From the sequence record PV796108.1: a stretch of 64,000 nt of DNA. One strand, written 5' to 3'. Each line of letters opens with the position of its first letter. The first letter of the stretch is position 1. The notes beneath the pieces were generated by a model that saw only the letters and a list, made by a program, of their open reading frames with translations, made no database searches and was not told the origin of the DNA. The position numbers and the translations under genes were made by a program. Positions 49,895-60,714 of the stretch are shown here, one piece after another.

Positions 49895-51376
49895 ATGGAA
49901 GTGGCAAAATTAGTAGGTATCGCTCGTGTTTTAAAAGGTGCTCGTTTTAAATGGTCTGGAGAGGACTTTGAGGTAGTTATCGCAGGTTCTGACCCAGTAG
50001 TTAAAACAAATCTTCATGGAGAGGACAAAGAAGTTGGCAACTTATCTACTTTTATTACAGAAGATGTTTCTGATGTAAATGTAATTGTTGGTGACGCATT
50101 TGTTAAACCTGAAGCACCTTCACACGAATCAACAATCAAGGAAAAATTAAAAGCTAAAGCTCGTTCGAAGAAACCATCACTTGAGTTTCGTCCTGATAGT
50201 ATTACGATCTCTGGTGGCTCAATTGACACATCAGCAATTACCAAGAAACAATTGGGTACTGATACAAAAGTGAGTAAGCTTTCATCTGAAGTTGGTAAAC
50301 TTAAAGTTGGTGCTCGTTTAACTTCTGACCGAGTAACTTCAGTAGAAAGTAAAGTTGATTCAACAGCATCAGTTGCTCAACGTGCTGAACGATTAGCTGG
50401 TTATGCATTAGATCAAAATCAAGCAGTAGCAGATTTCCATCAGTCGGAAATCGAAAAAGTTGCTCGTCGTGTTGGAAAATTAGAAGTTAAAAATGAACTT
50501 ACAAAAACTAAGGAGGAAAATTCAATGAACTTACAACAAAAATTCGCTCAAAAATCTCAAGAGGTAGCTAACCGTAATAACTTACAGGAGAAATTCGCTG
50601 CAAAATCGGCTTCAAAACAGAAGGGATTTGGTTCTATGTTAAACAACTTCAAAGGTCTATTCGGTAAAGTAGAAGATTTATTTGCATTCTCTCCACTTAC
50701 AGGTGGTTTAGCTGTTAAGAAGAAAGATGGCGGTTTAGTAGCTTATCAAGATGGTGGTTTAACTGATGTTTCTGGTTTATCTTTAGACTTCAATGTACCA
50801 GCATTCAAGTTACCAGTAGCTGCAAAAGATGTGAAAGCTGGAGACGCTGTTCTTCATAACGGTGAAGTTGCTTACGTTATCGGAGTAAACGATGACTACT
50901 TAGAAACAATCGTACCAGAAAAAGGTTCTAAAGGTTCTGTATTACCTGTTAAGAACGTATTGTTCGGTCAAGCATTCTATGTTGTTGTTAAAACATTAGA
51001 TGCAGCTGGTAACGGTGGTTTCGACCCAATGTTACTTATGGCATTAGGTGATGGAAACAAAGACGACTTACTTCCACTTCTTTTAATGGGTGGAGGTTTA
51101 GGCGGTAATGGCGCTCAAGCTGGTGGAATCGACCCAATGATGTTAATGATGATGGGCGACAAAACTGATGACTTATTACCACTTATCTTAATGCAACAAG
51201 GTGGTTTAACTGGTCAAGGTTTCAATCCTTTATTGTTCTTACTTGGAGACGACAAAGGTTCTAAAAAGGATTTACTTCCATTACTTCTTATGCAACAAGG
51301 TGGAGGTCTTTTCGGTGGACAAGCAGCACCAGCTCCATCTGCACCAGTAGTAGAAGTTAAAAAAGATCAAAAGTAA
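49895..51376 (+). CDS. Protein with conserved beta domain and three Gly/Met/Leu-rich DP..DDLLP repeats
   Basis: C-terminal half is paralogous to 51514 (FGKVE..FAFSP.TGGLAV...DF.VPAFKLPV). Confidence 0.8.
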   Translation: MEVAKLVGIARVLKGARFKWSGEDFEVVIAGSDPVVKTNLHGEDKEVGNLSTFITEDVSDVNVIVGDAFVKPEAPSHESTIKEKLKAKARSKKPSLEFRPDSITISGGSIDTSAITKKQLGTDTKVSKLSSEVGKLKVGARLTSDRVTSVESKVDSTASVAQRAERLAGYALDQNQAVADFHQSEIEKVARRVGKLEVKNELTKTKEENSMNLQQKFAQKSQEVANRNNLQEKFAAKSASKQKGFGSMLNNFKGLFGKVEDLFAFSPLTGGLAVKKKDGGLVAYQDGGLTDVSGLSLDFNVPAFKLPVAAKDVKAGDAVLHNGEVAYVIGVNDDYLETIVPEKGSKGSVLPVKNVLFGQAFYVVVKTLDAAGNGGFDPMLLMALGDGNKDDLLPLLLMGGGLGGNGAQAGGIDPMMLMMMGDKTDDLLPLILMQQGGLTGQGFNPLLFLLGDDKGSKKDLLPLLLMQQGGGLFGGQAAPAPSAPVVEVKKDQK

Positions 51377-51513: not shown

Positions 51514-52320
51514 ATGAAAAACTTATTAGCAGGTGTAAAAGGTCAATTTGGAAAGGTAGAGAACGTATTTGCATTTTCACCAGTAACAGGCGGTCTAGCA
51601 GTTCGTGTTGGTTATGGTAAAGAGTTCGTTGCATTCCAAGATGGTCAATTAGTAGATGTTGCAGGTCTAACTCTTGATTTCAAAGTACCAGCGTTCAAAT
51701 TACCAGTGAATGCTTCAGAAGTAAAAGCTGGCGATGTTGTTCAAAATGGTGCTGAATACTTATATGTTACAGCAGTAGCTGATGGTTATGTAGAAGCTGT
51801 ATCTCCAGCTCGTCGTGAAAAAGTGAATGTATTACCAACTACGAATCTATTATTCGGTAAACCATTCTTCACTGTTGTTCGTACTATCGACGGAGCAGGT
51901 GCTGGTTTCGACCCAACAATGCTTATGTTAATGTCTGATGGTGGAAGCAAAGAAGACTTACTTCCATTCTTACTTATGTCTGGTGGCTTAAATGGTCAAC
52001 AAGGACAAATGAATCCAATGATGCTTATGGCTCTTCAGGATTCTACTGATGACCTATTACCTCTTTTACTCATGCAACAAGGTGGCGCATTAGGTGAAGG
52101 TTTCAATCCATTAATGATGCTTGCAATGGGTGGAGACAAAGGCGGTAAGTTAAATGATTTACTTCCACTTATGATGATGCAACAAGGTGGAGGCGCTGCT
52201 GGTGGTATTAACCCAATGATGCTTATGATGATGGGTGACGGCGGTTCTGACATGAAAGACTTGATGATGATGCAAGCTTTATCAGGTGGAAATGGCTTCA
52301 ATCTTTTCGGAGCTAAGTAA
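51514..52320 (+). CDS. Paralog of 49895 with four Gly/Met/Leu-rich repeats
   Basis: 268 aa, GAGGAGG SD. Confidence 0.8.
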   Translation: MKNLLAGVKGQFGKVENVFAFSPVTGGLAVRVGYGKEFVAFQDGQLVDVAGLTLDFKVPAFKLPVNASEVKAGDVVQNGAEYLYVTAVADGYVEAVSPARREKVNVLPTTNLLFGKPFFTVVRTIDGAGAGFDPTMLMLMSDGGSKEDLLPFLLMSGGLNGQQGQMNPMMLMALQDSTDDLLPLLLMQQGGALGEGFNPLMMLAMGGDKGGKLNDLLPLMMMQQGGGAAGGINPMMLMMMGDGGSDMKDLMMMQALSGGNGFNLFGAK

Positions 52321-52526
52321 TGGATTTCGGTAATATGAACCCGAAAGAGTTACGAGCTATGGCAAGAAAGTTAAATGCCATGGCTCAAGCTCTTGAGTTG
52401 GCTCAAAATCCAGAAAAGTTCATGCAAAAGAAAGTCCGTTCTAAAATGAATGGTGTTAAACGTAAAATGAAGAATCAAGTTATCAATGGTGTTTTGGGTA
52501 ATTCACTTTCCAATAAATCAAAATGA
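52320..52526 (+). CDS. Small basic helical protein
   Basis: 68 aa, TAATG-coupled to 51514. Confidence 0.7.
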   Translation: MDFGNMNPKELRAMARKLNAMAQALELAQNPEKFMQKKVRSKMNGVKRKMKNQVINGVLGNSLSNKSK

Positions 52527-52628
52527 GTTTATCATTAAGACTTGGAAAGCCATGTATTGGATGTAAGTTCATTGAACTTTTATCATAAAAAATAAAAAAA
52601 ATTGACAATTGAAAGGGAGTTATTAATT

Positions 52629-53480
52629 ATGCGTAAAGTAGTATATGGTTCAACAACAGTAGACATCGAGGACAACAACTTAACAGTACAGGACATTCGT
52701 GAGGTAATGTCTGAAACATACCCTGAGTTAGCAAATGCAACACACACTGAAGCTGATGGCGTTATTACATTTAAAGTCCAAGCTGGTACAAAAGGTGCGG
52801 TTCGTATTGTTAAGTATGGTTCAACAACAATCGACATCGAAGATGATGCTCTAACTGTAAATGATATCCGTGAAGTAATGGCGGAAACTTACCCTGAATT
52901 AGCCAATGCATCTCATACACAAGAGGGTAACGTAATCGAGTTCAAGGTACAAGCAGGAACAAAAGGAGCCGTACGAGTTGTTAAGTACGGTTCCACTTCA
53001 ATTGATATCGAAGACGATGCATTAACTGTCAACGATATTCGTGAGGTAATGGCTGAGACTTATCCTGAACTTGCTAACGCTTCACATACACAGGAAGGTA
53101 ACGTAATCGAATTTAAAGTGCAAGCTGGTACGAAAGGTGCTGTCCGTGTTGTAAAATACGGTAGCACTTCTATCGACATTGAGGATGATGCATTGACTGT
53201 TAATGACATCCGTGAGGTAATGGCTGAGACTTATCCTGAGTTGGCTAATGCGTCTCATACTCAAGAAGGCAATGTTATTGAGTTCAAGGTGCAAGCTGGA
53301 ACCAAAGGTGCTACTCGTGTAGTAAAATATGGTTCTACTACAATTGATATCGAGGATGACGCTTTAACAGTTAACGACATTCGTGAAGTAATGGCTGAAA
53401 CGTATCCAGAACTAGCAAATGCTTCTCACACTCAAGAGGGCAATGTGATCGAATTTAAAGTACAAGCAGGTACAAAAGGT
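52629..53480 (+). repeat. Five in-frame tandem repeats (168 + 4 x 171 bp)
   Basis: Units 52629-52796, 52797-52967, 52968-53138, 53139-53309, 53310-53480. Confidence 0.95.
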
Positions 53481-53528
53481 GGTCTTGAGTTCTTCAAAGC
53501 TATTGCACCAAAATTAAGAAAGAAGTAA
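52629..53528 (+). CDS. Polyubiquitin-like precursor: five tandem prokaryotic Ubl domains (PRTRC protein C / Prok_Ub-like) plus 15-aa tail
   Basis: Start at ATG 52629 after AAGGGAG. Units of 56/57 aa with YPEL and terminal F-K-V-Q-A-G-T-K-G, matching the remembered YPEL...GTKG signature of PRTRC protein C. Confidence 0.88.
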   Translation: MRKVVYGSTTVDIEDNNLTVQDIREVMSETYPELANATHTEADGVITFKVQAGTKGAVRIVKYGSTTIDIEDDALTVNDIREVMAETYPELANASHTQEGNVIEFKVQAGTKGAVRVVKYGSTSIDIEDDALTVNDIREVMAETYPELANASHTQEGNVIEFKVQAGTKGAVRVVKYGSTSIDIEDDALTVNDIREVMAETYPELANASHTQEGNVIEFKVQAGTKGATRVVKYGSTTIDIEDDALTVNDIREVMAETYPELANASHTQEGNVIEFKVQAGTKGGLEFFKAIAPKLRKK

Positions 53529-53535
53529 TATGAAT

Positions 53536-53568
53536 GGGATGGAGGCCTTGGGCTTTCATCCCTTTTTT
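53536..53568 (+). terminator. Intrinsic terminator after the poly-Ubl gene
   Basis: GGGATGGAGGCC / GGCTTTCATCCC stem plus T6. Confidence 0.7.
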
Positions 53569-53608
53569 CGGTGTAATTATATTTGTATTATTAAAAGGAG
53601 GTAATTGT

Positions 53609-53983
53609 ATGAGTCAAGAAGCTACAGATTTACAAGTTTCATTGGAAAGTATTCTTACAGATGACGGTGAAGAAACAGTTCCAGCACCTGAAACAAGAAG
53701 TTCATGGGAGGTTGCAGGTTTTGGTGGTCTTGAGGCATTTGTTTGTGAGAGATTAGAAGCTTTACCAAACCAACCAATTGTTAATGGTACAGTGAAAGCT
53801 AATGTTGAAAGAATTATGTCAGCAGAAAAGGTTGAGGATTTAAGTGATATCTCAACTGGTACTTTAGAAACAATTGTAGAAGAATTAAGACGTTCAGTTA
53901 ATAGTCATTTAAGTCGTCTTGATGATTTTGCGCCTCGTGTTGGTCGTGCAATGCCAATTGAAAGAGAAAGTGACTTTATCTAA
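53609..53983 (+). CDS. Acidic hypothetical protein in the Ubl operon
   Basis: Start moved to ATG 53609 after AAAGGAGG; 124 aa. Confidence 0.75.
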   Translation: MSQEATDLQVSLESILTDDGEETVPAPETRSSWEVAGFGGLEAFVCERLEALPNQPIVNGTVKANVERIMSAEKVEDLSDISTGTLETIVEELRRSVNSHLSRLDDFAPRVGRAMPIERESDFI

Positions 53984-53997
53984 AGGAGGGAATTAAC

Positions 53998-55536
53998 TTG
54001 ACGAACTTAGAAACATTAAGAAATCGAGTTTCACATATTGTAACGTCTAGAAGACTGGTAGATGATGGTCTTATCAAGGAACATATCACAATTCCACAAT
54101 CTGAAGTGGAAGAAGGTAAGATTGTTAGAGAAGTAGTTTTCGAAGCAATTAAAGATACATTCACTGGATGTCGTATTAATCCAAATAAACATTCGTTTTC
54201 AGTTAAATTGGATGGTGCAATCAGTGTTAAAGCACAGGAGCTTTATGATTATATTCAAGAGCATCCACATTGGAAGTCTTTCTTAGAGTCACAGCATTCT
54301 AGCAAGTTACGTACAATTTTAAATCTCTCAAATGTTTATCAAGAAAGGAGAGAATTAAAATATAAGAAAGAAGATGATGGGCGCCGTTTCATTTATGTAC
54401 CATTTGAACCAAAGGACATTCCGAGTTATAACCAACAAGGTCTGTATTATATGCTTCAGTACTTATCTGAAAGTTTTAGTCGTGAACGTAGAGCTTCTGA
54501 GATTTTTGATGAAGTTATGCAATTGATTGAGACTGAACGTGAACGTCGTATCGAAGAACGTAACCGTTTAATGGCACGTATCGAAGCGAAGTACAAGGAA
54601 GATATCAAAGCAAGCTTGTTGAAACCCATCGGAGCGATTCAAGGAGATGTTCGTGAGAAACTTATCCAAGAACGTATGGTGAAATGGTGTAATGAGCAAG
54701 GTTTAGCACCAGCTATCCCTCAAGAGCTTACATATCAAAACATTATTCCAGTAGGTACAGAAGTATCTGTAGTTGTTAAGTCAGGTTCTCAAGAAGAAGG
54801 ATGGTTTGCAGTTCCACGTTCTGGAGGATTTGATATTCCTGAAGGATTTGAACGTTTAATGGTTTATGATAATGTAACTCGTCACGATGCATTACACCAA
54901 CGTTCTCGTAATGGTTCAGCTCCAATCGTAATCAATGAAGATACTTTCACTGAGTTTGACATTGCTTATTGGAATCATTTAATCCCAGCGGAACATGCTC
55001 AGTATAAAGCAGGTTATGAGGCTGTAGTTGCTTCTGTAACGGCTGCTGAAATTAAAGTAGTACAAGACTTACTTGATGAGCAAAAACGTGAGGAAGAGGC
55101 ACGTATTCAACGTCAGAAGGAAGAGCTTGCACAACGACGTGAAGAATTAAGACGTCAACGTGAGCGTGAAGATGAAGAGTTACGTAATCTTGAACGTTCT
55201 TATGACAATGAAAATGAACAAAAGCGTCAAGAAAGAAAACGTAGAAGCTTAGATGCGATTGCTCGTCAGTTACAAGAACAAGCTGAAACACATTCTGTAC
55301 CAGAGGACGATGATTTGTTTGAAGAGATTATCGAATCTGATTACAAACTCTTGTATAATCCATTTGGTGTAGATAGTAAGTTTACGTTAGTTCATCCAGA
55401 TGGTGAGGAAGAAAACTTCTCAAGTGAAGATGATTTAAAGGTTCGTGTCTTTGAAGAATTAGAATTAGATGAACATGAAGCAGTTGTTTATCACAAAATT
55501 AATCAAAGTCGTGTGTACAAAGCTTTAGAAAAATAA
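53998..55536 (+). CDS. 512-aa protein with long E/R-rich coiled coils in the Ubl operon
   Basis: AAGGAGG SD + TTG; no family recognised. Confidence 0.8.
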   Translation: MTNLETLRNRVSHIVTSRRLVDDGLIKEHITIPQSEVEEGKIVREVVFEAIKDTFTGCRINPNKHSFSVKLDGAISVKAQELYDYIQEHPHWKSFLESQHSSKLRTILNLSNVYQERRELKYKKEDDGRRFIYVPFEPKDIPSYNQQGLYYMLQYLSESFSRERRASEIFDEVMQLIETERERRIEERNRLMARIEAKYKEDIKASLLKPIGAIQGDVREKLIQERMVKWCNEQGLAPAIPQELTYQNIIPVGTEVSVVVKSGSQEEGWFAVPRSGGFDIPEGFERLMVYDNVTRHDALHQRSRNGSAPIVINEDTFTEFDIAYWNHLIPAEHAQYKAGYEAVVASVTAAEIKVVQDLLDEQKREEEARIQRQKEELAQRREELRRQREREDEELRNLERSYDNENEQKRQERKRRSLDAIARQLQEQAETHSVPEDDDLFEEIIESDYKLLYNPFGVDSKFTLVHPDGEEENFSSEDDLKVRVFEELELDEHEAVVYHKINQSRVYKALEK

Positions 55537-55566
55537 ACCGTTAGATAACTAAGGAGGAAATTTATT

Positions 55567-56292
55567 ATGGCAAACCGTCCAGATTCTATTAACATTGAGA
55601 TTTTACAAGAGGGTGTTACAGTTAAAACAACGAAAGGTGGCGTAACATCTATCAAGGAAACAAATCTTGAGCAGATTCAACGTCAATTAACAAGCAATGA
55701 GCGTATTGAGACGCCGTTGCTTCCAAGTATTTGGGGTGTTCAAAAGTATGTAAAGCGTGGTAAACGTGAGCTTTATGTAATCACGACTCCTCCAGGGGTA
55801 CGTAAAGTACAGTATACTGGTGATGACCGTGGTGAGTATGAGATTCCTGTACCAGCAGCAGTTTGGTTTGTAACATCACAAGAACGTTCTGGTGGTGGAC
55901 GTCAATTAGTTCATACAACAGTTTATGCAATTAAAAATCCTATTTTAACAGGTATTGAACAATTGTATCGTATGCCATTTAGTAACTGCGATAACTCATA
56001 CATTTGCTGGGGAGATGAGAGTCCACAAATTTCATCACCAAAAAGTATTCAATCTATTCCAGACCGTTTCTTTGGAATGCCTTTCAACAGTGATTTAGGA
56101 AGTAATGCGTATCAACCGATTAAAGAAGAGATTGATGGAAAAGAGATTAGTCACTTCCGTATCAATCATTTATTCCGTTACTTAGATCGTAAGTTGAAAG
56201 CAGACAAGGATTTCCGTTTCCCGAACAATCATTTAAACAGTTACGAGTCATTTAAACGTGTACTTGACCACGAGCTTCGTCGTTTATCTTAA
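55567..56292 (+). CDS. Prokaryotic E2-like protein (Prok-E2 family D / PRTRC protein B-like)
   Basis: TPLLP...LYRMPFSNC..SYICWG with candidate catalytic Cys; lies between Ubl and JAB/E1 genes. Confidence 0.8.
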   Translation: MANRPDSINIEILQEGVTVKTTKGGVTSIKETNLEQIQRQLTSNERIETPLLPSIWGVQKYVKRGKRELYVITTPPGVRKVQYTGDDRGEYEIPVPAAVWFVTSQERSGGGRQLVHTTVYAIKNPILTGIEQLYRMPFSNCDNSYICWGDESPQISSPKSIQSIPDRFFGMPFNSDLGSNAYQPIKEEIDGKEISHFRINHLFRYLDRKLKADKDFRFPNNHLNSYESFKRVLDHELRRLS

Positions 56293-56345
56293 TCTATATT
56301 TTGGTAGTTAATAAAAAAACAAACAATTAAAAGGAGAGATTTATT

Positions 56346-57725
56346 ATGACTAAAGCAGCAAAATCAAGCGCAATGGCGGCACTACGAGCAAAAATGGCAG
56401 GACAAACAATGGCATATCACATGGGACCTCAAACAGCTGAGGTCTATGCACAAAAGCCAACAAACTATGTTACAGCAGGTAATGGTGTTTTCCGTGTTAT
56501 CCAAAAGGATATCGGTGCTTTCGTAACAAAAGTTGCTGATGGTAAGATTCCAGGCTTCCCAGAGATGGAGGAAGGCGTACATTTACAAATTCCAAAGATT
56601 CCTTATAAGTATTGGTTACAAGTATTATCATTCTACAAAGATGTTAATGCGAAAGATGGTACTGAAGCATCTGTATTATTCTTCTGGAACACAAACAATG
56701 TAACATTACCAACTCATTATGACCCAACGCCAGCACAAGCTGCAAAAGGTGAGTTAGGACCAGAAGTAAAAGGTTTAACACAAGATGGTCAATTAATCAT
56801 TTATTGCCCAGTACAAAAGAACTCTGGTAGTTTATCAGACTTCACGAAAGATTCATTTGTAGATTACTTACGTCTACATACAGCTCAGTTATGTGAAACA
56901 CATTCTCATAATACAATGGGAGCGTTCTGGTCAGGAACTGACGATAGCAATGAGAACTATCCACAGTTCTATGGTGTTATTGGTAAAGTTTCAAGCAAAG
57001 AACCTGAACATCGTTTCCGTTATGCATTAGGTAAAGAAAAATTTGATTGCGAACTATGGGAATTATTCGAAAAGCCTAAAGTTCAAAAGATGGAAATTGT
57101 AACAATCGACATTCCAGGTGTTGGCACTGTTGAAGATGTACAAGAAATTAAAAATCTTGACTTTAAAGGTCCATGGCCGATGGTTGATTATCCAAGTGAT
57201 TGGATGGGTCAACATAGTAAAAGTTACTACACTCCCAGTTACGGCACAGCCTATACTCGTAAAACCTACGGTACAGGTGGTACAGCAGTCCAAACCCACG
57301 GAGGTCAAGGTGGCGGAATCTTTCCCAGCTACGGACACTGGCCAGAAGAATGGGACACTCTTGGGGGCTGGGCTGACGCTGGCAATCAGTCTGGCCTTGG
57401 GTTGGCTGCGGAAGTAGCTGGCGAAGGAGACTATGGTTTCGGAGAAGGTACCAGGCAAGGGCAAGAATCTTTCAACGAAGCGTACAAAAAATTCTTACAA
57501 GAACCAGTCGAGGGCCAAGGGACGTGGACGTTCTCAAAAGCAAGGGAAAAGAAAGTAGCTGAAGGTCAGCTTGAAACTGATGGTACAGTAGTTGATTATG
57601 TAATCATGGAACCAACAGAAGCTGAAGAATGTGATGAGATTCATTCAATGATTGGTGAATTAATTAACTTTGGTGTTTATGCAACCATCGTTGATATTGC
57701 GAAAGAAGAACATCTTGTAGAGTAG
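56346..57725 (+). CDS. JAB/MPN+ metallo-isopeptidase (PRTRC protein A-like) with long low-complexity tail
   Basis: Catalytic Glu in GTEASV plus ETHSHNTMGAFWSGTDD (HxH-x7-S-x2-D). Confidence 0.88.
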   Translation: MTKAAKSSAMAALRAKMAGQTMAYHMGPQTAEVYAQKPTNYVTAGNGVFRVIQKDIGAFVTKVADGKIPGFPEMEEGVHLQIPKIPYKYWLQVLSFYKDVNAKDGTEASVLFFWNTNNVTLPTHYDPTPAQAAKGELGPEVKGLTQDGQLIIYCPVQKNSGSLSDFTKDSFVDYLRLHTAQLCETHSHNTMGAFWSGTDDSNENYPQFYGVIGKVSSKEPEHRFRYALGKEKFDCELWELFEKPKVQKMEIVTIDIPGVGTVEDVQEIKNLDFKGPWPMVDYPSDWMGQHSKSYYTPSYGTAYTRKTYGTGGTAVQTHGGQGGGIFPSYGHWPEEWDTLGGWADAGNQSGLGLAAEVAGEGDYGFGEGTRQGQESFNEAYKKFLQEPVEGQGTWTFSKAREKKVAEGQLETDGTVVDYVIMEPTEAEECDEIHSMIGELINFGVYATIVDIAKEEHLVE

Positions 57726-57793
57726 GCATTAGCCTACTTTACATTTTTTTATTGCACTACATATCTTATTTATATTAAAAGGAGAGATTTATT

Positions 57794-58651
57794 ATGAAAC
57801 TTGAAAAAACTTATTCTTTAGATACTATGTACAGAACTGCTAAACATTTTATCGTAATTGGAGCTGGGGGTAACGGTGGTTATTTCATTCCACAATTAGC
57901 TCGTATGGTTTCTGTTCAAAATAAAATTCGTGAAGTACAACGTTTACCATTACACCGTATTACAATCATTGAAGCTGATGGAGTAGAAGCGAAGAATTTA
58001 ACTCGTCAAAACTTTATTGCAGCTGATATTGATAAAAATAAAGGTGAAGTAATGGCTGCTCGTTATGCTCGTGCTTTTGGTCTTGAAATTGGATTAGTAG
58101 GGCAATATCTTGATAGTCATGAGATGTTACTTAAAATTATGCGTGAAAGTACATCAAAAGAAGTACCAGTTATTTGTGGTATGGTAGACAACAATAAAAC
58201 TCGTAAATTAATGCATGATGCATTTAAAGCATACTCAGGTGCATTCTATCTTGATGTAGGTAATGAAGAGTTTGCAGGACAATGTGTTCTTGGTTACAAC
58301 CACAACAAAGATCGTTTTGTTTTACCAAGAGAAGGTGGAGATTCAATCCAAAGCTTTAGTTTACCAAGTGTTTGTGAAGTATTCCCAGAGGTAATGGAAG
58401 CGCAAGACAAATTACCAACTGAAATGTCTTGTGCAGAACGTTCTGAGTCAGCTCCTCAAAATATTTATACAAACATGACAGCATCAAATGAAGCATTAGG
58501 ATTTGTGAACCATTTATTAACAGACAATGTAAATGGTTCAACACCAACTGGTTTACGTGTTCATACAACAATCTTTGATGCTAACACAATGAATAAAACA
58601 ACTCGTTTTAATCGTACGAGTGAGCTTGAAAAATATGTGGCGGGGAAATAA
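57794..58651 (+). CDS. ThiF/E1-like ubiquitin-activating enzyme (PRTRC ThiF-like)
   Basis: VIGAGGNGG, DGVEAKNLTRQNF, GMVDNNKTR, YLDVGN, candidate catalytic Cys in MSCAE...PQ. Confidence 0.92.
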   Translation: MKLEKTYSLDTMYRTAKHFIVIGAGGNGGYFIPQLARMVSVQNKIREVQRLPLHRITIIEADGVEAKNLTRQNFIAADIDKNKGEVMAARYARAFGLEIGLVGQYLDSHEMLLKIMRESTSKEVPVICGMVDNNKTRKLMHDAFKAYSGAFYLDVGNEEFAGQCVLGYNHNKDRFVLPREGGDSIQSFSLPSVCEVFPEVMEAQDKLPTEMSCAERSESAPQNIYTNMTASNEALGFVNHLLTDNVNGSTPTGLRVHTTIFDANTMNKTTRFNRTSELEKYVAGK

Positions 58652-58678
58652 TCCCTGCCCTCCTTTTTGGAGGTAGTT

Positions 58679-59110
58679 ATGTATACAACAATTGATTTAT
58701 TATCAAAGAGTCTTAATGAAAATCAAATTCGTGGTAGATTAGGCTTAGATTACTCTGACATAGTTGAATTAAAACATGTACATATGCCCGTTCTTCTTCA
58801 TGGAAGAAAAGGTGAAATGCATTATTACTTGTTAAAAAATCCAGATAATTATCCTGGCGCTCAAGCTGATACTTTATCTGATATGAAAAGTATTGTTGCT
58901 GTTTCTCCAGAACTTGAACCATGGATAGAAGAACTAATAAGTGAAACAGACGAACACGACGGAAGTTTCATTGGTCGAACTAATAACTACAAAAATGATA
59001 TTTACCCATATTGGTGGTTAGTTTCTCATACATTAATACCATGTTTATCAGAGTCTAATACAAGTTCAATTGTGCAACTAAAAAGTGATGAAGACTTAAC
59101 AATAGATTAG
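58679..59110 (+). CDS. Paralog family C with C-terminal motif
   Basis: Start ATG 58679; MYTTI...YYL..NPD.YPG...YWWL; ends SNTSSIVQLKSDE. Confidence 0.75.
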   Translation: MYTTIDLLSKSLNENQIRGRLGLDYSDIVELKHVHMPVLLHGRKGEMHYYLLKNPDNYPGAQADTLSDMKSIVAVSPELEPWIEELISETDEHDGSFIGRTNNYKNDIYPYWWLVSHTLIPCLSESNTSSIVQLKSDEDLTID

Positions 59111-59119
59111 AGGTGACAC

Positions 59120-59554
59120 ATGTACACAACAATAAGACAATTAATGGATGATGTCGGTTTTGATGAGGTAGCTTATCAGATTGGAATGGCTGCAAAAGAT
59201 ATGAATAAAGCATTTGATTTTGAAATACCTGTTTACTTAGTAGGAGAAAATCATAACAAGCAATGGTATTACTTGATAGACCATCCTGATGGATATGAAG
59301 GAGGAAATAGTAATGTTCTTGTTGCATTACAAGATATCAAAATCTATAAAGAACGAGAAGTTCGTCCATATTCAGACTGGGAAAATCTTAGGGATGAAGT
59401 AGACGAAGATGGCGATTTCCTTGGTGATTATAATGATTATGATTCGGCAATCAACAAGTATTGGTGGATTTCTTTTAGCCAACCAATCACATTGTTTGAG
59501 TACGATAACAATCAAAATCTTAGAAAGTTAAATAAAGAAACCCCTTTTGAGTGA
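59120..59554 (+). CDS. Paralog family C with C-terminal motif
   Basis: MYTTI...YYL..HPD.YEG...YWWI; ends DNNQNLRKLNKET. Confidence 0.75.
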   Translation: MYTTIRQLMDDVGFDEVAYQIGMAAKDMNKAFDFEIPVYLVGENHNKQWYYLIDHPDGYEGGNSNVLVALQDIKIYKEREVRPYSDWENLRDEVDEDGDFLGDYNDYDSAINKYWWISFSQPITLFEYDNNQNLRKLNKETPFE

Positions 59555-59640
59555 GCAATTTGTAATGGAATGTTGTATTCTATTAAATGGGATACAACCT
59601 GCCATTATAAGTGGCACTAAAATTGGGGAGGGACTTATAA

Positions 59641-60714
59641 ATGCTAGACTTTTTATTAGTTGCGATTTCCATTATTGGATTTATCGCATTAGGCGCTTTT
59701 GCGTATTCGATTTGGAAGGCTGCAAGAAACCATGAAACAACACACTATGACACGAAGGACGAACATGCTTATGGAGAATTTGCATTCAACAATAAGTTAT
59801 GGGTATTACCTGTAGTTGCTATTTTGATGTTTACAATCTTCTTCTTTAACTTATGTACAACTCGTGTTCAACCAGGTTATAACGGCATTACATATTCATT
59901 AGTATCAGGTTTAAAGAATGACGTTAAGACACCAGGTTTAAAAGTGCATTATCCATGGGAAACAATTCATGATTATCCAACATCAACAGAAACGGTTTAT
60001 TTAAAGAAACCAAAGAAAGATGATGGAGAGGATGACAAGAGCTTTTCAGTGAATACAAACGATGGTAAGAGTGTAGATGTAGATGCAGTTTATTCATATC
60101 ATATGCAATCTGAAAAACTTCCACACATCTTTGCACGTTTCCGTCGTCAGCCATCTAATAAAATTGAGGAATCTTATATTAAACAAGAGATTTCTAACCA
60201 TGTACAAGCTGCAACAACAAAGTATTCTGTTCTAGAAGTATATTCACACAAACGTTCTGAAATCACAAAAGAGATTAAAGACAATCTAGCAAAATCACTT
60301 GTGAAAGATGGTATTGTACTAGAGAAGTTTACAATCGCAGATGTTCGTCCTGATAAAGATACAAAAGTTAAACTTCAGGCTATTGCTGACATGCAAAACG
60401 AACAAGAACGTTTAGCTCGTGAAGAACAGGTTAAGCGTCAACAAGCAGCGAATGATAAGATTGAAGCTGAAGGTAAGAAAGTTACAGAACTTATCAACGC
60501 AGATCGTGATGCAGAGAAAATCCGTATCAATGCTGAAGCACAATCTGTAGCCAACGAAAAATTAAAAGCTTCATTAAGTCCAGAAGTTATTCAATCTGAA
60601 TGGATTAAGAAATGGAATGGACAAAAATCTGTTGTTGAAGGTGGTTCTGGTTCTATTATTAACATGCCAGCTGACATTATTAAACAACAATTGGAACAAG
60701 GGGCTAAGAAGTAA
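59641..60714 (+). CDS. SPFH/Band 7 (prohibitin/flotillin-like) membrane protein
   Basis: Two N-terminal TMs; TRVQPGYNGI, PGLKVHYPW, TNDGKSVDVDA, I.L..F.I.DV, coiled coil, W..KW.G. Confidence 0.9.
   Translation: MLDFLLVAISIIGFIALGAFAYSIWKAARNHETTHYDTKDEHAYGEFAFNNKLWVLPVVAILMFTIFFFNLCTTRVQPGYNGITYSLVSGLKNDVKTPGLKVHYPWETIHDYPTSTETVYLKKPKKDDGEDDKSFSVNTNDGKSVDVDAVYSYHMQSEKLPHIFARFRRQPSNKIEESYIKQEISNHVQAATTKYSVLEVYSHKRSEITKEIKDNLAKSLVKDGIVLEKFTIADVRPDKDTKVKLQAIADMQNEQERLAREEQVKRQQAANDKIEAEGKKVTELINADRDAEKIRINAEAQSVANEKLKASLSPEVIQSEWIKKWNGQKSVVEGGSGSIINMPADIIKQQLEQGAKK

What the first reader, a model, noticed from the sequence alone, without database searches (positions are those of the whole stretch)
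52629..58651. Phage-encoded ubiquitin-like conjugation operon with a polyubiquitin-style precursor
Seen: one co-oriented cluster encodes (i) five head-to-tail Ubl units, each ending AGTKG, (ii) two unknown proteins, (iii) an E2-like protein (PFSN..ICWG), (iv) a JAB peptidase with an intact HxH-x7-S-x2-D motif, and (v) a ThiF/E1 with GxGGxG, NLTRQ and SCAE. Established: these four families form the PRTRC cassette (ThiF plus proteins A, B, C; Pfam Prok_Ub, Prok-E2_D, Prok-JAB), usually described on plasmids with a single-domain protein C next to ParB. Bacterial E1/E2/Ubl systems such as Bil act against phage. Inference: here a phage carries the full machinery, and the Ubl is made as a concatemer that the JAB enzyme would cut at TKG/A into monomers, as in eukaryotic polyubiquitin. 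It may tag host or phage proteins, or counter host Ubl defences. No ParB or ParM-like PRTRC gene is visible in this window.
Basis: partly seen in the sequence, partly recalled or inferred. Interest (0 to 1): 0.95.

Follow-up and report, generated by a model that had tools for sequence, protein, structure and literature searches.

The report
Jumbo-phage ubiquitin-like system with polyubiquitin-style gene
A 230-kb Bacillus phage carries its own ubiquitin-like tagging kit (E1, E2, JAB peptidase and two unknown partners), and the tag is encoded as five head-to-tail, nearly identical copies with a short end cap, the same gene layout as eukaryotic polyubiquitin; this layout has not been described for a bacterial virus in the literature I could search.

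Summary
Window 52629-58651 is a co-oriented six-gene cassette in a Bacillus cereus jumbo myophage (99.5% identical to phage Edson). It encodes a 299-aa protein of five 56/57-aa Prok_Ub units, each ending AGTKG, plus a 15-aa cap. Then come a 124-aa protein, a 512-aa protein, a Prok-E2_D E2 (Cys147), a JAMM/JAB peptidase with an intact motif, and a ThiF-type E1.

It is a distant sister of the PRTRC / "type 6d" cassette, not a member. Every PRTRC model scores below its cutoff, whereas a temperate Burkholderia phage passes all five.

Processing into monomers is not shown. It is strongly suggested by four things:
- Tandem relatives (2-6 units) always keep GTKG at each junction.
- Units are 96-100% identical in protein although synonymous sites are fully randomised.
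- Amino-acid changes occurred in parallel in all inner units.

Tandem arrays were found only on large phage contigs, and none in 185,579 reference genomes. Targets and biological role remain unknown. I rate it a new variant of a known kind, of high interest.

The parts
52629..53528 (+). Poly-Ubl gene: five head-to-tail Prok_Ub units plus a 15-aa C-terminal cap (299 aa). The ATG at 52629 is preceded by the Shine-Dalgarno AAAGGGAG.
   Evidence: The AlphaFold2 model shows 5 x (beta-beta-alpha-alpha-beta-beta) modules with coil junctions.
52629..52796 (+). Ubl unit 1 (56 aa). It is the most divergent unit, 73-75% identical to the others.
52797..52967 (+). Ubl unit 2 (57 aa, ends AGTKG)
52968..53138 (+). 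Ubl unit 3 (57 aa). Its protein is identical to unit 4, at 80% DNA identity.
53139..53309 (+). Ubl unit 4 (57 aa)
53310..53480 (+). Ubl unit 5 (57 aa, ends AGTKG)
53481..53525 (+). C-terminal cap of 15 residues after the last GTKG. It is not conserved outside the closest relatives.
53536..53572 (+). Terminator-like hairpin (12-bp stem, 7 GC pairs) plus a T-run, directly after the poly-Ubl stop codon.
53609..53983 (+). Small accessory protein (124 aa; Shine-Dalgarno AAAGGAGG) with an acidic-hydrophobic C-terminus. A small protein sits in this position in the related six-gene cassettes.
   Evidence: no Pfam, NCBIfam, PHROG or PADLOC hit
53998..55536 (+). Large accessory protein (512 aa), mostly alpha-helical with long Glu/Arg-rich helices. 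It is a cassette-specific, fast-evolving family.
   Evidence: There are 30 clusters in 1.84 billion representatives. No Pfam hit in 24 members. The model is weak, pLDDT 60, and has no fold match.
55567..56292 (+). E2-like protein (241 aa), Prok-E2_D, with Cys147 and Asn140.
   Evidence: Cys147 and Asn140 are conserved in 58/58 phage homologues.
56346..57725 (+). JAB/JAMM metallopeptidase (459 aa) with a JAB-N-like N-terminal region and a long low-complexity C-terminal part.
   Evidence: hhalign to the canonical PRTRC_A gives probability 87.7%, E 3.4e-6.
57716..57753 (+). Terminator-like hairpin at the end of the JAB gene.
57794..58651 (+). ThiF-type E1 (285 aa): Gly-rich loop at 23-29, NLTRQ at 68-72, Asp132, Cys213 (SCAE).
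58639..58669 (+). Terminator-like hairpin closing the cassette.

Best explanation
This is a self-contained ubiquitin-like protein-conjugation module of a Bacillus jumbo phage. It is a distant sister of the PRTRC / Iyer-Aravind 'type 6d' cassettes.

Shown by sequence:
- The genes encode a tandem Prok_Ub protein, an E2 with an invariant Cys and Asn, a JAMM peptidase with a complete metal-binding and catalytic motif, a ThiF-type E1 with its nucleotide-binding residues and a conserved Cys, and two cassette-specific accessory proteins.
- The poly-Ubl gene is followed by its own terminator-like hairpin.

Inferred:
1. The poly-Ubl is made in excess and is a precursor.
2. The JAB peptidase cuts after the Gly of each GTKG. 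This releases five near-identical ~6-kDa beta-grasp monomers and removes the 15-aa cap, so each monomer ends in a free Gly.
3. The E1 adenylates that Gly, possibly with a Cys213 thioester.
4. The Ubl passes to E2 Cys147.
5. It is then attached to lysines of target proteins. The 124-aa and 512-aa proteins are the likeliest specificity or adaptor (E3-like) factors, and JAB may also reverse the mark.

On this reading the tandem array is a dosage device, as in eukaryotic polyubiquitin. It implies abundant targets. Virion proteins are one candidate, but the targets are unknown.
For: Family assignments.

GTKG is the true C-terminus in relatives:
- At least 10 IMG/VR loci have a single Ubl whose frame stops directly after GxKG. 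L020 has two such genes side by side.
- The bona fide PRTRC Ubl of BgVeeders33 ends ...GTKGG plus an extension of about 60 aa.

Tandem family: 15 proteins with 3-6 units in the 5.8-billion-protein database, plus IMG/VR arrays of 2-6 units. Every junction is (A/S)GTKG. End caps run from 1 to 21 non-conserved residues (N, M, E, V, DVA, TTLA ...).

Unit equivalence under selection:
- Units 2-5 are 96-100% identical in protein but 77-80% in DNA. Units 3 and 4 have 0 amino-acid differences and 32-33 synonymous codon differences out of 56-57, and pS is 0.81-0.89.
- Codon differences between units equal or exceed random synonymous choice.
- The same pattern appears in KLEB27-3, L008, L012 and L017.
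- Units are positionally orthologous between the window and WH1. Even so, Ala/Ser at column 28 and Val/Leu at the second residue after the junction changed in all inner units, on unit-specific codons.

Structure: five separate beta-beta-alpha-alpha-beta-beta modules, with flexible low-confidence junctions and pTM 0.26. Domain-level matches are to ubiquitin-like folds.

The six-gene order is conserved on other 180-265 kb contigs.

A terminator follows the Ubl gene.

Bub and Bil precedent: the peptidase of the operon matures the Ubl (papers 10.1101/2024.11.21.623953 and PMC1779556).
Against: - No cleavage, adenylate, thioester or conjugate has been observed for this or any type-6d/PRTRC system. 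I found no experimental paper.
- Multi-beta-grasp Ubls that are not cut between domains exist in Bil and Bub (10.1101/2024.11.21.623966).
- A single unit scores just below the Pfam cutoff (23.7 against 25), and JAB scores below its cutoff.
- The 'downstream His' that Iyer et al. describe for this E2 type is not conserved here.
- The beta-grasp fold is supported only by a medium-confidence model and by mixed Foldseek hits, with POTRA repeats ranking first.
- The roles of the two accessory proteins are pure inference. orf512 shows no similarity to the alpha-hel2 / PRTRC_F protein.
- E1 Cys213 is absent from 20 of the 93 E1-like sequences compared.
Confidence: 0.62

Rival explanations
1. The chain is not cut between units. 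Only the end cap is removed, and the whole five-domain protein is the modifier, or a self-assembling scaffold or virion component. This is how the two- and three-beta-grasp Ubls of Bil and Bub operons behave.
For: Multi-domain Ubls of 1-3 beta-grasp domains are common in Bil and Bub, and some form filaments (10.1101/2024.11.21.623966). WH1 labels the homologue gp211 'virion structural protein', which could mean the intact chain sits in the particle. Some relatives have linkers of 3-30 residues between units.
Against: - Every internal junction keeps the exact motif that is the free C-terminus in monomeric relatives.
- Inner units are held identical and change in parallel, as expected if each meets the same E1, E2 and JAB surfaces.
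- Unit number varies freely (1, 2, 3, 4, 5, 6), and L020 uses two separate monomer genes.
- The model shows no fixed inter-unit packing.
- The peptidase must accept almost any residue after the Gly, given the variety of caps. It would therefore also accept the junction residues.
Confidence: 0.2
2. The Ubl is a sulfur carrier (ThiS/MoaD-like). The E1 activates it to make a thiocarboxylate for cofactor, tRNA or DNA thiolation, and it is not a protein tag.
For: The E1 is a short ThiF/MoeB-type enzyme with no ubiquitin-fold domain. The Ubl gives weak whole-protein hits to SAMP1 and MoaD. It ends in a C-terminal Gly.
Against: An E2 with invariant Cys and Asn is present in 58/58 related phage cassettes. 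There is no rhodanese, cysteine desulfurase or biosynthetic gene in or next to the cassette. Five-fold amplification of a catalytic carrier has no obvious rationale.
Confidence: 0.06
3. The biological role is counter-defence. The phage system either tags and inactivates host proteins, or its JAB and Ubl interfere with host Bil-type Ubl defences. It does not modify phage proteins.
For: Bacterial Bil systems tag phage tail proteins (papers cited). The cassette lies in the non-structural arm of the genome, among small early-type genes. Its distribution is patchy and module-like, with no conserved neighbours.
Against: There is no PADLOC or Bil similarity beyond a weak E1 hit. Nothing ties the cassette to hosts that carry Bil. 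The WH1 virion label on the Ubl points the other way. This rival concerns targets, not chemistry, and is compatible with the best explanation's mechanism.
Confidence: 0.25

Closest known systems
PRTRC cassette (NCBIfam TIGR03735-03738, TIGR03742) = 'type 6d' operon of Iyer, Burroughs & Aravind 2006 (PMC1779556)
   Same: The gene order is the same: Ubl, accessory protein(s), E2 (Prok-E2_D, catalytic Cys), JAB with an N-terminal extra domain, then a ThiF-type E1 without rhodanese. The Ubl ends in GTKG. PRTRC models are the best NCBIfam hits for the Ubl, JAB and E1.
   Different: - All scores are below the curated cutoffs, and PRTRC_B and PRTRC_F give no hit.
- The Ubl is tandem (x5) instead of single.
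- The alpha-hel2 / PRTRC_F protein is replaced by two unrelated proteins of 124 and 512 aa.
- No ParB or ParM-like partner was found among the nine ORFs scanned.
- The carrier is a lytic-type jumbo phage rather than a plasmid or ICE.
Eukaryotic polyubiquitin genes (for example yeast UBI4, human UBB/UBC)
   Same: Both have head-to-tail units with no spacer, protein-identical units with synonymous divergence, a variable unit number, a short non-conserved C-terminal cap (often one residue) that blocks the terminal Gly, and a dedicated peptidase encoded alongside.
   Different: - The unit is a 57-aa minimal beta-grasp of the Prok_Ub family ending KG, not a 76-aa ubiquitin ending GG.
- The presumed processing enzyme is a JAMM metallopeptidase.
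- No evidence of processing exists yet.
- The similarity is in gene architecture, probably arrived at independently.
[quoted passage not shown]
   Same: They have the same Ubl + E2 + JAB + E1 logic. The peptidase matures the Ubl. Multi-beta-grasp Ubls occur.
   Different: - There is no PADLOC or sequence membership.
- The domains of Bil and Bub multi-domain Ubls differ from each other, and only the last carries the reactive end.
- Bub lacks the catalytic Cys and has DUF6527.
- Those systems are host defences, whereas this one is phage-encoded.
Lambda/T1 tail-assembly Ubl (TAPI) with the JAB-containing TAPK
   Same: It is a phage-encoded beta-grasp protein with a C-terminal Gly next to a JAB peptidase (PMC1779556).
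   Different: It has no E1 or E2, a single Ubl domain fused to another domain, and it sits inside the tail module.

Membership tests
PRTRC system (NCBIfam equivalogs) | Protein C (TIGR03738) scores above the cutoff of 45.95 bits | tested here: not met
   A single unit scores 19.9 bits. The whole protein reaches 71.7 bits only by summing five units. BgVeeders33, the positive control, scores 107.1.
PRTRC system (NCBIfam equivalogs) | Protein B / E2 (TIGR03737) scores above 131.45 bits | tested here: not met
   No hit at E<0.1. BgVeeders33 scores 202.9.
PRTRC system (NCBIfam equivalogs) | Protein A / JAB (TIGR03735) scores above 101.8 bits | tested here: not met
   36.2 bits over residues 183-228 only. 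BgVeeders33 scores 224. hhalign still shows homology over 161 columns.
PRTRC system (NCBIfam equivalogs) | ThiF (TIGR03736) scores above 144.75 bits | tested here: not met
   102.6 bits, E 2e-29. It is the best hit but falls below the cutoff. BgVeeders33 scores 288.6.
PRTRC system (NCBIfam equivalogs) | Protein F / alpha-hel2 and ParB-related or ParM-like neighbours are present | tested here: not met
   None of the 9 ORFs from 52602 to 60714 hit PRTRC_F, D, E or parB. The orf512 profile against the alpha-hel2-like set gives probability 0.05.
Iyer/Aravind type 6d operon | Small beta-grasp Ubl with a conserved C-terminal Gly | tested here: met
   Prok_Ub gives 5 stretches. GTKG ends every unit and is the true end in monomeric relatives. 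The model has beta-beta-alpha-alpha-beta-beta modules.
Iyer/Aravind type 6d operon | E2-fold protein with a conserved Cys | tested here: met
   Prok-E2_D scores 40.1 bits against a cutoff of 25. Cys147 is conserved in 58/58.
Iyer/Aravind type 6d operon | Absolutely conserved His downstream of the E2 Cys | tested here: not met
   The candidate columns are variable. Position 175 is Ser here, with His in 8 of 59. Position 201 has His in 5 of 59. This result depends on the alignment.
Iyer/Aravind type 6d operon | JAB with an N-terminal alpha+beta domain (JAB-N / DUF2016) and an intact JAMM motif | tested here: inconclusive
   The JAMM motif is invariant. There is no DUF2016 Pfam hit. hhalign extends into the JAB-N region of the canonical protein.
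Iyer/Aravind type 6d operon | Rapidly diverging alpha-helical protein between the Ubl and the E2 | tested here: inconclusive
   orf512 is predicted mostly helical and diverges fast. It has no detectable similarity to alpha-hel2.
Pfam Prok_Ub (PF14454) | The domain scores at or above the gathering threshold of 25 bits | tested here: inconclusive
   The whole protein scores 96.9 bits. Single units score 23.7 and 20.9 bits, and a KLEB27-3 unit scores 25.5.
Polyubiquitin-type precursor (functional class) | Spacer-less identical units, each ending in the reactive motif, plus a C-terminal cap | tested here: met
Polyubiquitin-type precursor (functional class) | Endoproteolytic release of monomers | not testable with these tools
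   There is only indirect sequence evidence.
Bil / Bub / CBASS-type defence Ubl systems | Similarity to the PADLOC models of those systems | tested here: not met
   Only a weak E1-E2 hit for the E1 (E 2e-5). There is nothing for the E2, JAB, Ubl or accessory proteins.

The most novel reading that the evidence does not exclude
Jumbo phages run a complete ubiquitin-like conjugation pathway of their own. Its modifier is made as a true polyubiquitin-type precursor, cut into identical monomers by a JAMM peptidase. The phage needs it in bulk because it covalently marks abundant proteins, possibly its own virion components, as the unexplained 'virion structural protein' label on the WH1 homologue hints. 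The polyubiquitin gene architecture would then have arisen independently in viruses of bacteria.
Probability: 0.4. Interest if true: 0.9.

Novelty: new variant of a known kind. Interest (0 to 1): 0.78.

Why it matters
Ubiquitin-like conjugation in bacteria has so far been characterised as host defence (Bil, CBASS type II, Bub). The type 6d/PRTRC cassette has been known from sequence since 2006, but I found no functional study of it. Here a phage-encoded sister system shows the hallmark gene architecture of eukaryotic polyubiquitin: identical spacer-less repeats, an end cap and a cognate peptidase. It also carries an unusually clean evolutionary signature, with protein identity maintained across fully randomised synonymous sites and parallel substitutions across repeats.

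If processing and conjugation are confirmed, three things follow:
- The phage side of the conflict would be shown to use Ubl tagging too.
- There would be a tractable, minimal Ubl system (a 57-aa modifier) in cultured phages of laboratory-friendly Bacillus hosts.
- There would be an independent origin of the polyubiquitin solution to modifier dosage.

Tried and rejected
1. Equating orf512 with the PRTRC alpha-helical protein (alpha-hel2 / PRTRC_F). This was rejected for lack of any signal: no Pfam hit for 10 in-between proteins or for 24 family members, hhalign probability 0.05, and no NCBIfam hit.

2. Structure of orf512. I do not use them.

3. Whole-chain Foldseek of the poly-Ubl. It ranked BamA POTRA repeats first. 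I read that as an artefact of matching any tandem of small alpha/beta domains. The domain-level hits are ubiquitin-like folds.

4. The Arash 'structural protein' labels on its E1 and E2-like proteins. They come from a list of 116 MS-detected proteins that includes ribonucleotide reductases. They show expression, not virion location.

5. The source of WH1's 'virion structural protein' label could not be traced, because no paper was found. I kept it only as a lead.

I replaced them with a narrower E2 alignment, a JAB alignment and a direct DNA pattern.

7. Long-tract gene conversion as the cause of unit identity was rejected. DNA identity between units is at or below the level of random synonymous choice, and the parallel changes sit on unit-specific codons.

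8. Sequence search of the PDB found nothing for the E2 or JAB, and only a weak ThiF match for the E1.

Slip, declared as required. A gene in related metagenomic phage contigs (the JAB gene of L008/L009) is interrupted once by an insertion. This report gives only the count.

Full report
**What is there**

The window is part of a Bacillus cereus jumbo myophage. Region 52000-59600 is 99.5% identical to Bacillus phage Edson (233.8 kb) and 85% identical to vB_BceM_WH1 (229.8 kb). A distant relative, B. australimaris phage KLEB27-3 (216.7 kb), carries the same cluster.

On the + strand there are six tightly spaced genes:
- Poly-Ubl, 52629-53528.
- A small protein. Its real start is the ATG at 53609, which has a perfect Shine-Dalgarno. 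The longer 149-aa reading from 53534 runs through a terminator-like hairpin.
- A 512-aa protein, 53998-55536.
- An E2, 55567-56292.
- A JAB peptidase, 56346-57725.
- A ThiF-type E1, 57794-58651.

Terminator-like hairpins follow the poly-Ubl, JAB and E1 genes. Fifteen such sites were found in 11.5 kb, against 5.8±2.4 in shuffles.

**Family assignments**

| Protein | Result |
|---|---|
| Poly-Ubl | Prok_Ub in five stretches, E 5.9e-28; PRTRC_C E 4e-20 |
| E2 | Prok-E2_D, 40.1 bits against a cutoff of 25 |
| JAB | Prok-JAB 21.3 bits (below 25); PRTRC_A E 4.4e-9 |
| E1 | ThiF E 1.2e-10; PRTRC_ThiF E 2e-29 |

- The two other proteins hit nothing in Pfam, NCBIfam or PADLOC. In PHROGs the 512-aa protein gives only one weak, unconvincing match (phrog_250, E 0.0011).
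- The JAMM signature (E107, H186, H188, S196, D199) is invariant in four divergent relatives.
- Across the phage homologues gathered from IMG/VR, E2 Cys147 and an Asn seven residues upstream are each present in 58/58. From general knowledge, this spacing recalls the HPN...C site of canonical E2s.
- The E1 Gly-rich loop, Asn68 and Asp132 are conserved. Cys213 is present in 73/93.
- No solved structure is close by sequence.

**Is it PRTRC?**

It is related to PRTRC but not a member.
- The temperate Burkholderia phage BgVeeders33 carries a cassette that passes all five NCBIfam PRTRC models: C 107, F 104, B 203, A 224 and ThiF 289 bits. Its Ubl ends ...GTKGG plus an extension of about 60 aa.
- The window's proteins score 19.9 (single unit), no hit, no hit, 36 and 103 bits on the same models. 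All are below cutoff.
- The layout corresponds to operon 'type 6d' of Iyer, Burroughs and Aravind 2006: a small Ubl with a C-terminal Gly, an alpha-helical protein, an E2 with Cys, JAB-N+JAB, and an E1 (PMC1779556). In that paper the Ubl is a single stand-alone domain. Their 'polyUbl' belongs to another operon type, 6e, now called Bub.
- A profile of the phage JABs aligns with the canonical PRTRC JAB over 161 columns (probability 88%). So the relationship is real but distant.

**The repeat**

The five units are 56/57 aa long and abut without a spacer. The last is followed by a 15-aa cap.
- Units 2-5 are 96-100% identical in protein but only 77-80% identical in DNA.
- Units 3 and 4 are identical in protein, yet 32-33 of 56-57 codons differ.
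- The proportion of synonymous differences is 0.81-0.89, which is beyond saturation.
- Against random synonymous codon choice under the phage's own usage, codon differences are at the random level in KLEB27-3. They are modestly above it in the window (181 against 156±11) and in WH1 (195 against 161±11). So there is no DNA-level homogenisation. There may even be selection against repeat identity.
- Units are positionally orthologous between the window and WH1 (85-92% DNA identity for unit i against unit i). The five-unit array therefore predates their split.
- Even so, two residues differ between the two phages in all inner units. These are Ala/Ser at column 28, and the second residue after the junction, which is Leu in all four inner units of WH1 but Val (units 2-4) or Thr (unit 5) in the window. 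In each unit the change sits on that unit's own codon, for example GCG/TCG in unit 2 and GCT/TCT in unit 3.
- That is parallel substitution under selection for unit equivalence. It is what one expects if every unit must fit the same E1, E2 and peptidase.
- The same pattern of high protein identity with low DNA identity recurs in KLEB27-3 and in metagenomic arrays L008, L012 and L017.

**Relatives show what GTKG is**

- The large protein database holds 15 tandem Prok_Ub proteins of 3-6 units. Every unit ends (A/S)GTKG. The last unit is followed by 1-21 non-conserved residues, often a single N, M, E or V.
- A JAB-based scan of IMG/VR found 112 related loci. Of the 80 kept, at least 59 have E2+JAB+E1 together, many on contigs of 140-370 kb.
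- Their Ubl genes span the whole range known for eukaryotic ubiquitin genes:
  - at least ten single Ubls whose frame stops directly after GxKG;
  - one locus (L020) with two such genes side by side;
  - singles fused to C-terminal extensions of 80-250 aa;
  - arrays of 2, 4, 5 and 6 units.
- L058 is a separate subfamily with ~70-aa units, so tandem arrays arose more than once.
- The peptidase must therefore expose the Gly from very varied contexts, and the internal junctions look exactly like those contexts.
- A strict DNA pattern for the unit finds 5/5 units in the window (0 expected). It finds only three single, chance-level hits in 185,579 species-representative bacterial and archaeal genomes. 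It finds tandem hits on six IMG/VR contigs of 66-264 kb.
- Among 50,697 deposited phage genomes, only Edson, WH1 and KLEB27-3 have this E2 and this Ubl.

**Structure**

- AlphaFold2 on the whole chain gives five beta-beta-alpha-alpha-beta-beta modules (pLDDT about 74-87). They are joined by ~9-residue coils of low confidence around QAGTKG. There is no fixed mutual arrangement, with pTM 0.26.
- Foldseek gives mixed results. Tandem POTRA repeats rank first. Domain-level hits include a di-ubiquitin-like protein (probability 0.92), FAF1 UBL1, an E. coli multi-ubiquitin-domain protein and protein G B1. They also include small single-domain phage proteins, among them a 63-aa protein of Acinetobacter jumbo phage ME3. 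ME3's record also annotates a PRTRC protein A and a ThiF.
- So the beta-grasp fold is supported but not cleanly proven.

**Accessory proteins**

- The order poly-Ubl, small protein, ~500-570-aa protein, E2, JAB, E1 is conserved on other jumbo contigs.
- The 512-aa family has only 30 clusters among 1.84 billion representatives, and none has a Pfam domain.
- It shows no similarity to the alpha-hel2 / PRTRC_F protein.
- Its model is too weak to use.

**Mechanism**

The most likely mechanism is as follows.
- Shown: the parts list, the intact catalytic residues, and the precursor-like architecture.
- Inferred: the Ubl message is made in excess (it has its own terminator). JAB cuts after each GTKG and removes the cap. 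The E1 adenylates the Gly, E2 Cys147 carries it, and it is attached to lysines of targets chosen with the help of the two accessory proteins.
- The tandem array is a dosage device, which implies abundant targets.
- WH1's record labels the poly-Ubl homologue and a neighbouring gene 'virion structural protein'. It uses that label selectively inside its structural module. I could not trace the source of the label, so virion proteins as targets is only a lead.

**Prior knowledge**

- Multi-beta-grasp Ubls in Bil and Bub are described.
- The type 6d cassette was described in 2006.
- The Aravind-lab overview of jumbo phages does not mention Ubl, JAB or E1 genes.
- My searches found no paper on a phage poly-Ubl or on the function of PRTRC/6d.
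- The library lacks most subscription journals, so absence there is not proof of novelty.

**Verdict**

This is a new variant of a known kind. The processing and conjugation steps are still inferred.

I recorded the position of an insertion that interrupts the JAB gene of related contigs (L008/L009) before applying the operators' rule on broken genes. I stopped there and joined nothing. Only the count (one gene, one insertion) is reported.

Noticed in passing
window 49895-51376 and 51514-52320: These are two paralogous proteins (58% identity over 221 aa) with unusual Met/Leu/Gly-rich repeats. They have no PHROG hit and lie directly upstream of the cassette. The WH1 homologue of the first is labelled 'virion structural protein'.
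   Followed up: partly
window 58667-59110 and 59120-59554: Two small proteins that look paralogous by eye (they share the MYTTI start and the YWW motif) follow the E1. WH1 has a NADAR-family gene in place of the first.
   Followed up: no
window 59641-60714: This is an SPFH/Band-7 protein (Pfam E 8e-25; phrog_200 E 2.8e-54) just downstream of the cassette.
   Followed up: no
window 52968-53309 compared with L002 (WH1) units 3-4: The inner units 3 and 4 have about three times the synonymous divergence between the window and WH1 (dS about 1.1) of units 1, 2 and 5, the E2 and the E1 (0.31-0.47). This is unexplained.
   Followed up: partly
L008:11696-13387 and the same gene in L009: The JAB gene of these 180-203 kb metagenomic phage contigs is interrupted once by an insertion of about 0.3 kb. 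There is no Rfam match, and its folding energy is not unusual (z -1.3). Its nature is undetermined.
   Followed up: partly
L007 / L083 (IMG/VR 184-kb contig), upstream of its single-Ubl cassette: By eye, a MoxR-like AAA ATPase and a VWA-like protein sit directly upstream of the Ubl-E2-JAB-E1 genes. I did not test this with HMMs.
   Followed up: no
L019:6895-7086: A third Ubl-like gene follows a two-unit array but lacks the GTKG end, so it may be a non-conjugatable variant.
   Followed up: no
L005 (Salmonella phage Arash) 1519-4539: Arash has an E2-like protein (its Cys aligns), a JAB and a ThiF in a row. The E2-like protein and the ThiF were detected by mass spectrometry in the published particle preparation. 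No Prok_Ub was recognised in the adjacent 60-aa ORF.
   Followed up: partly
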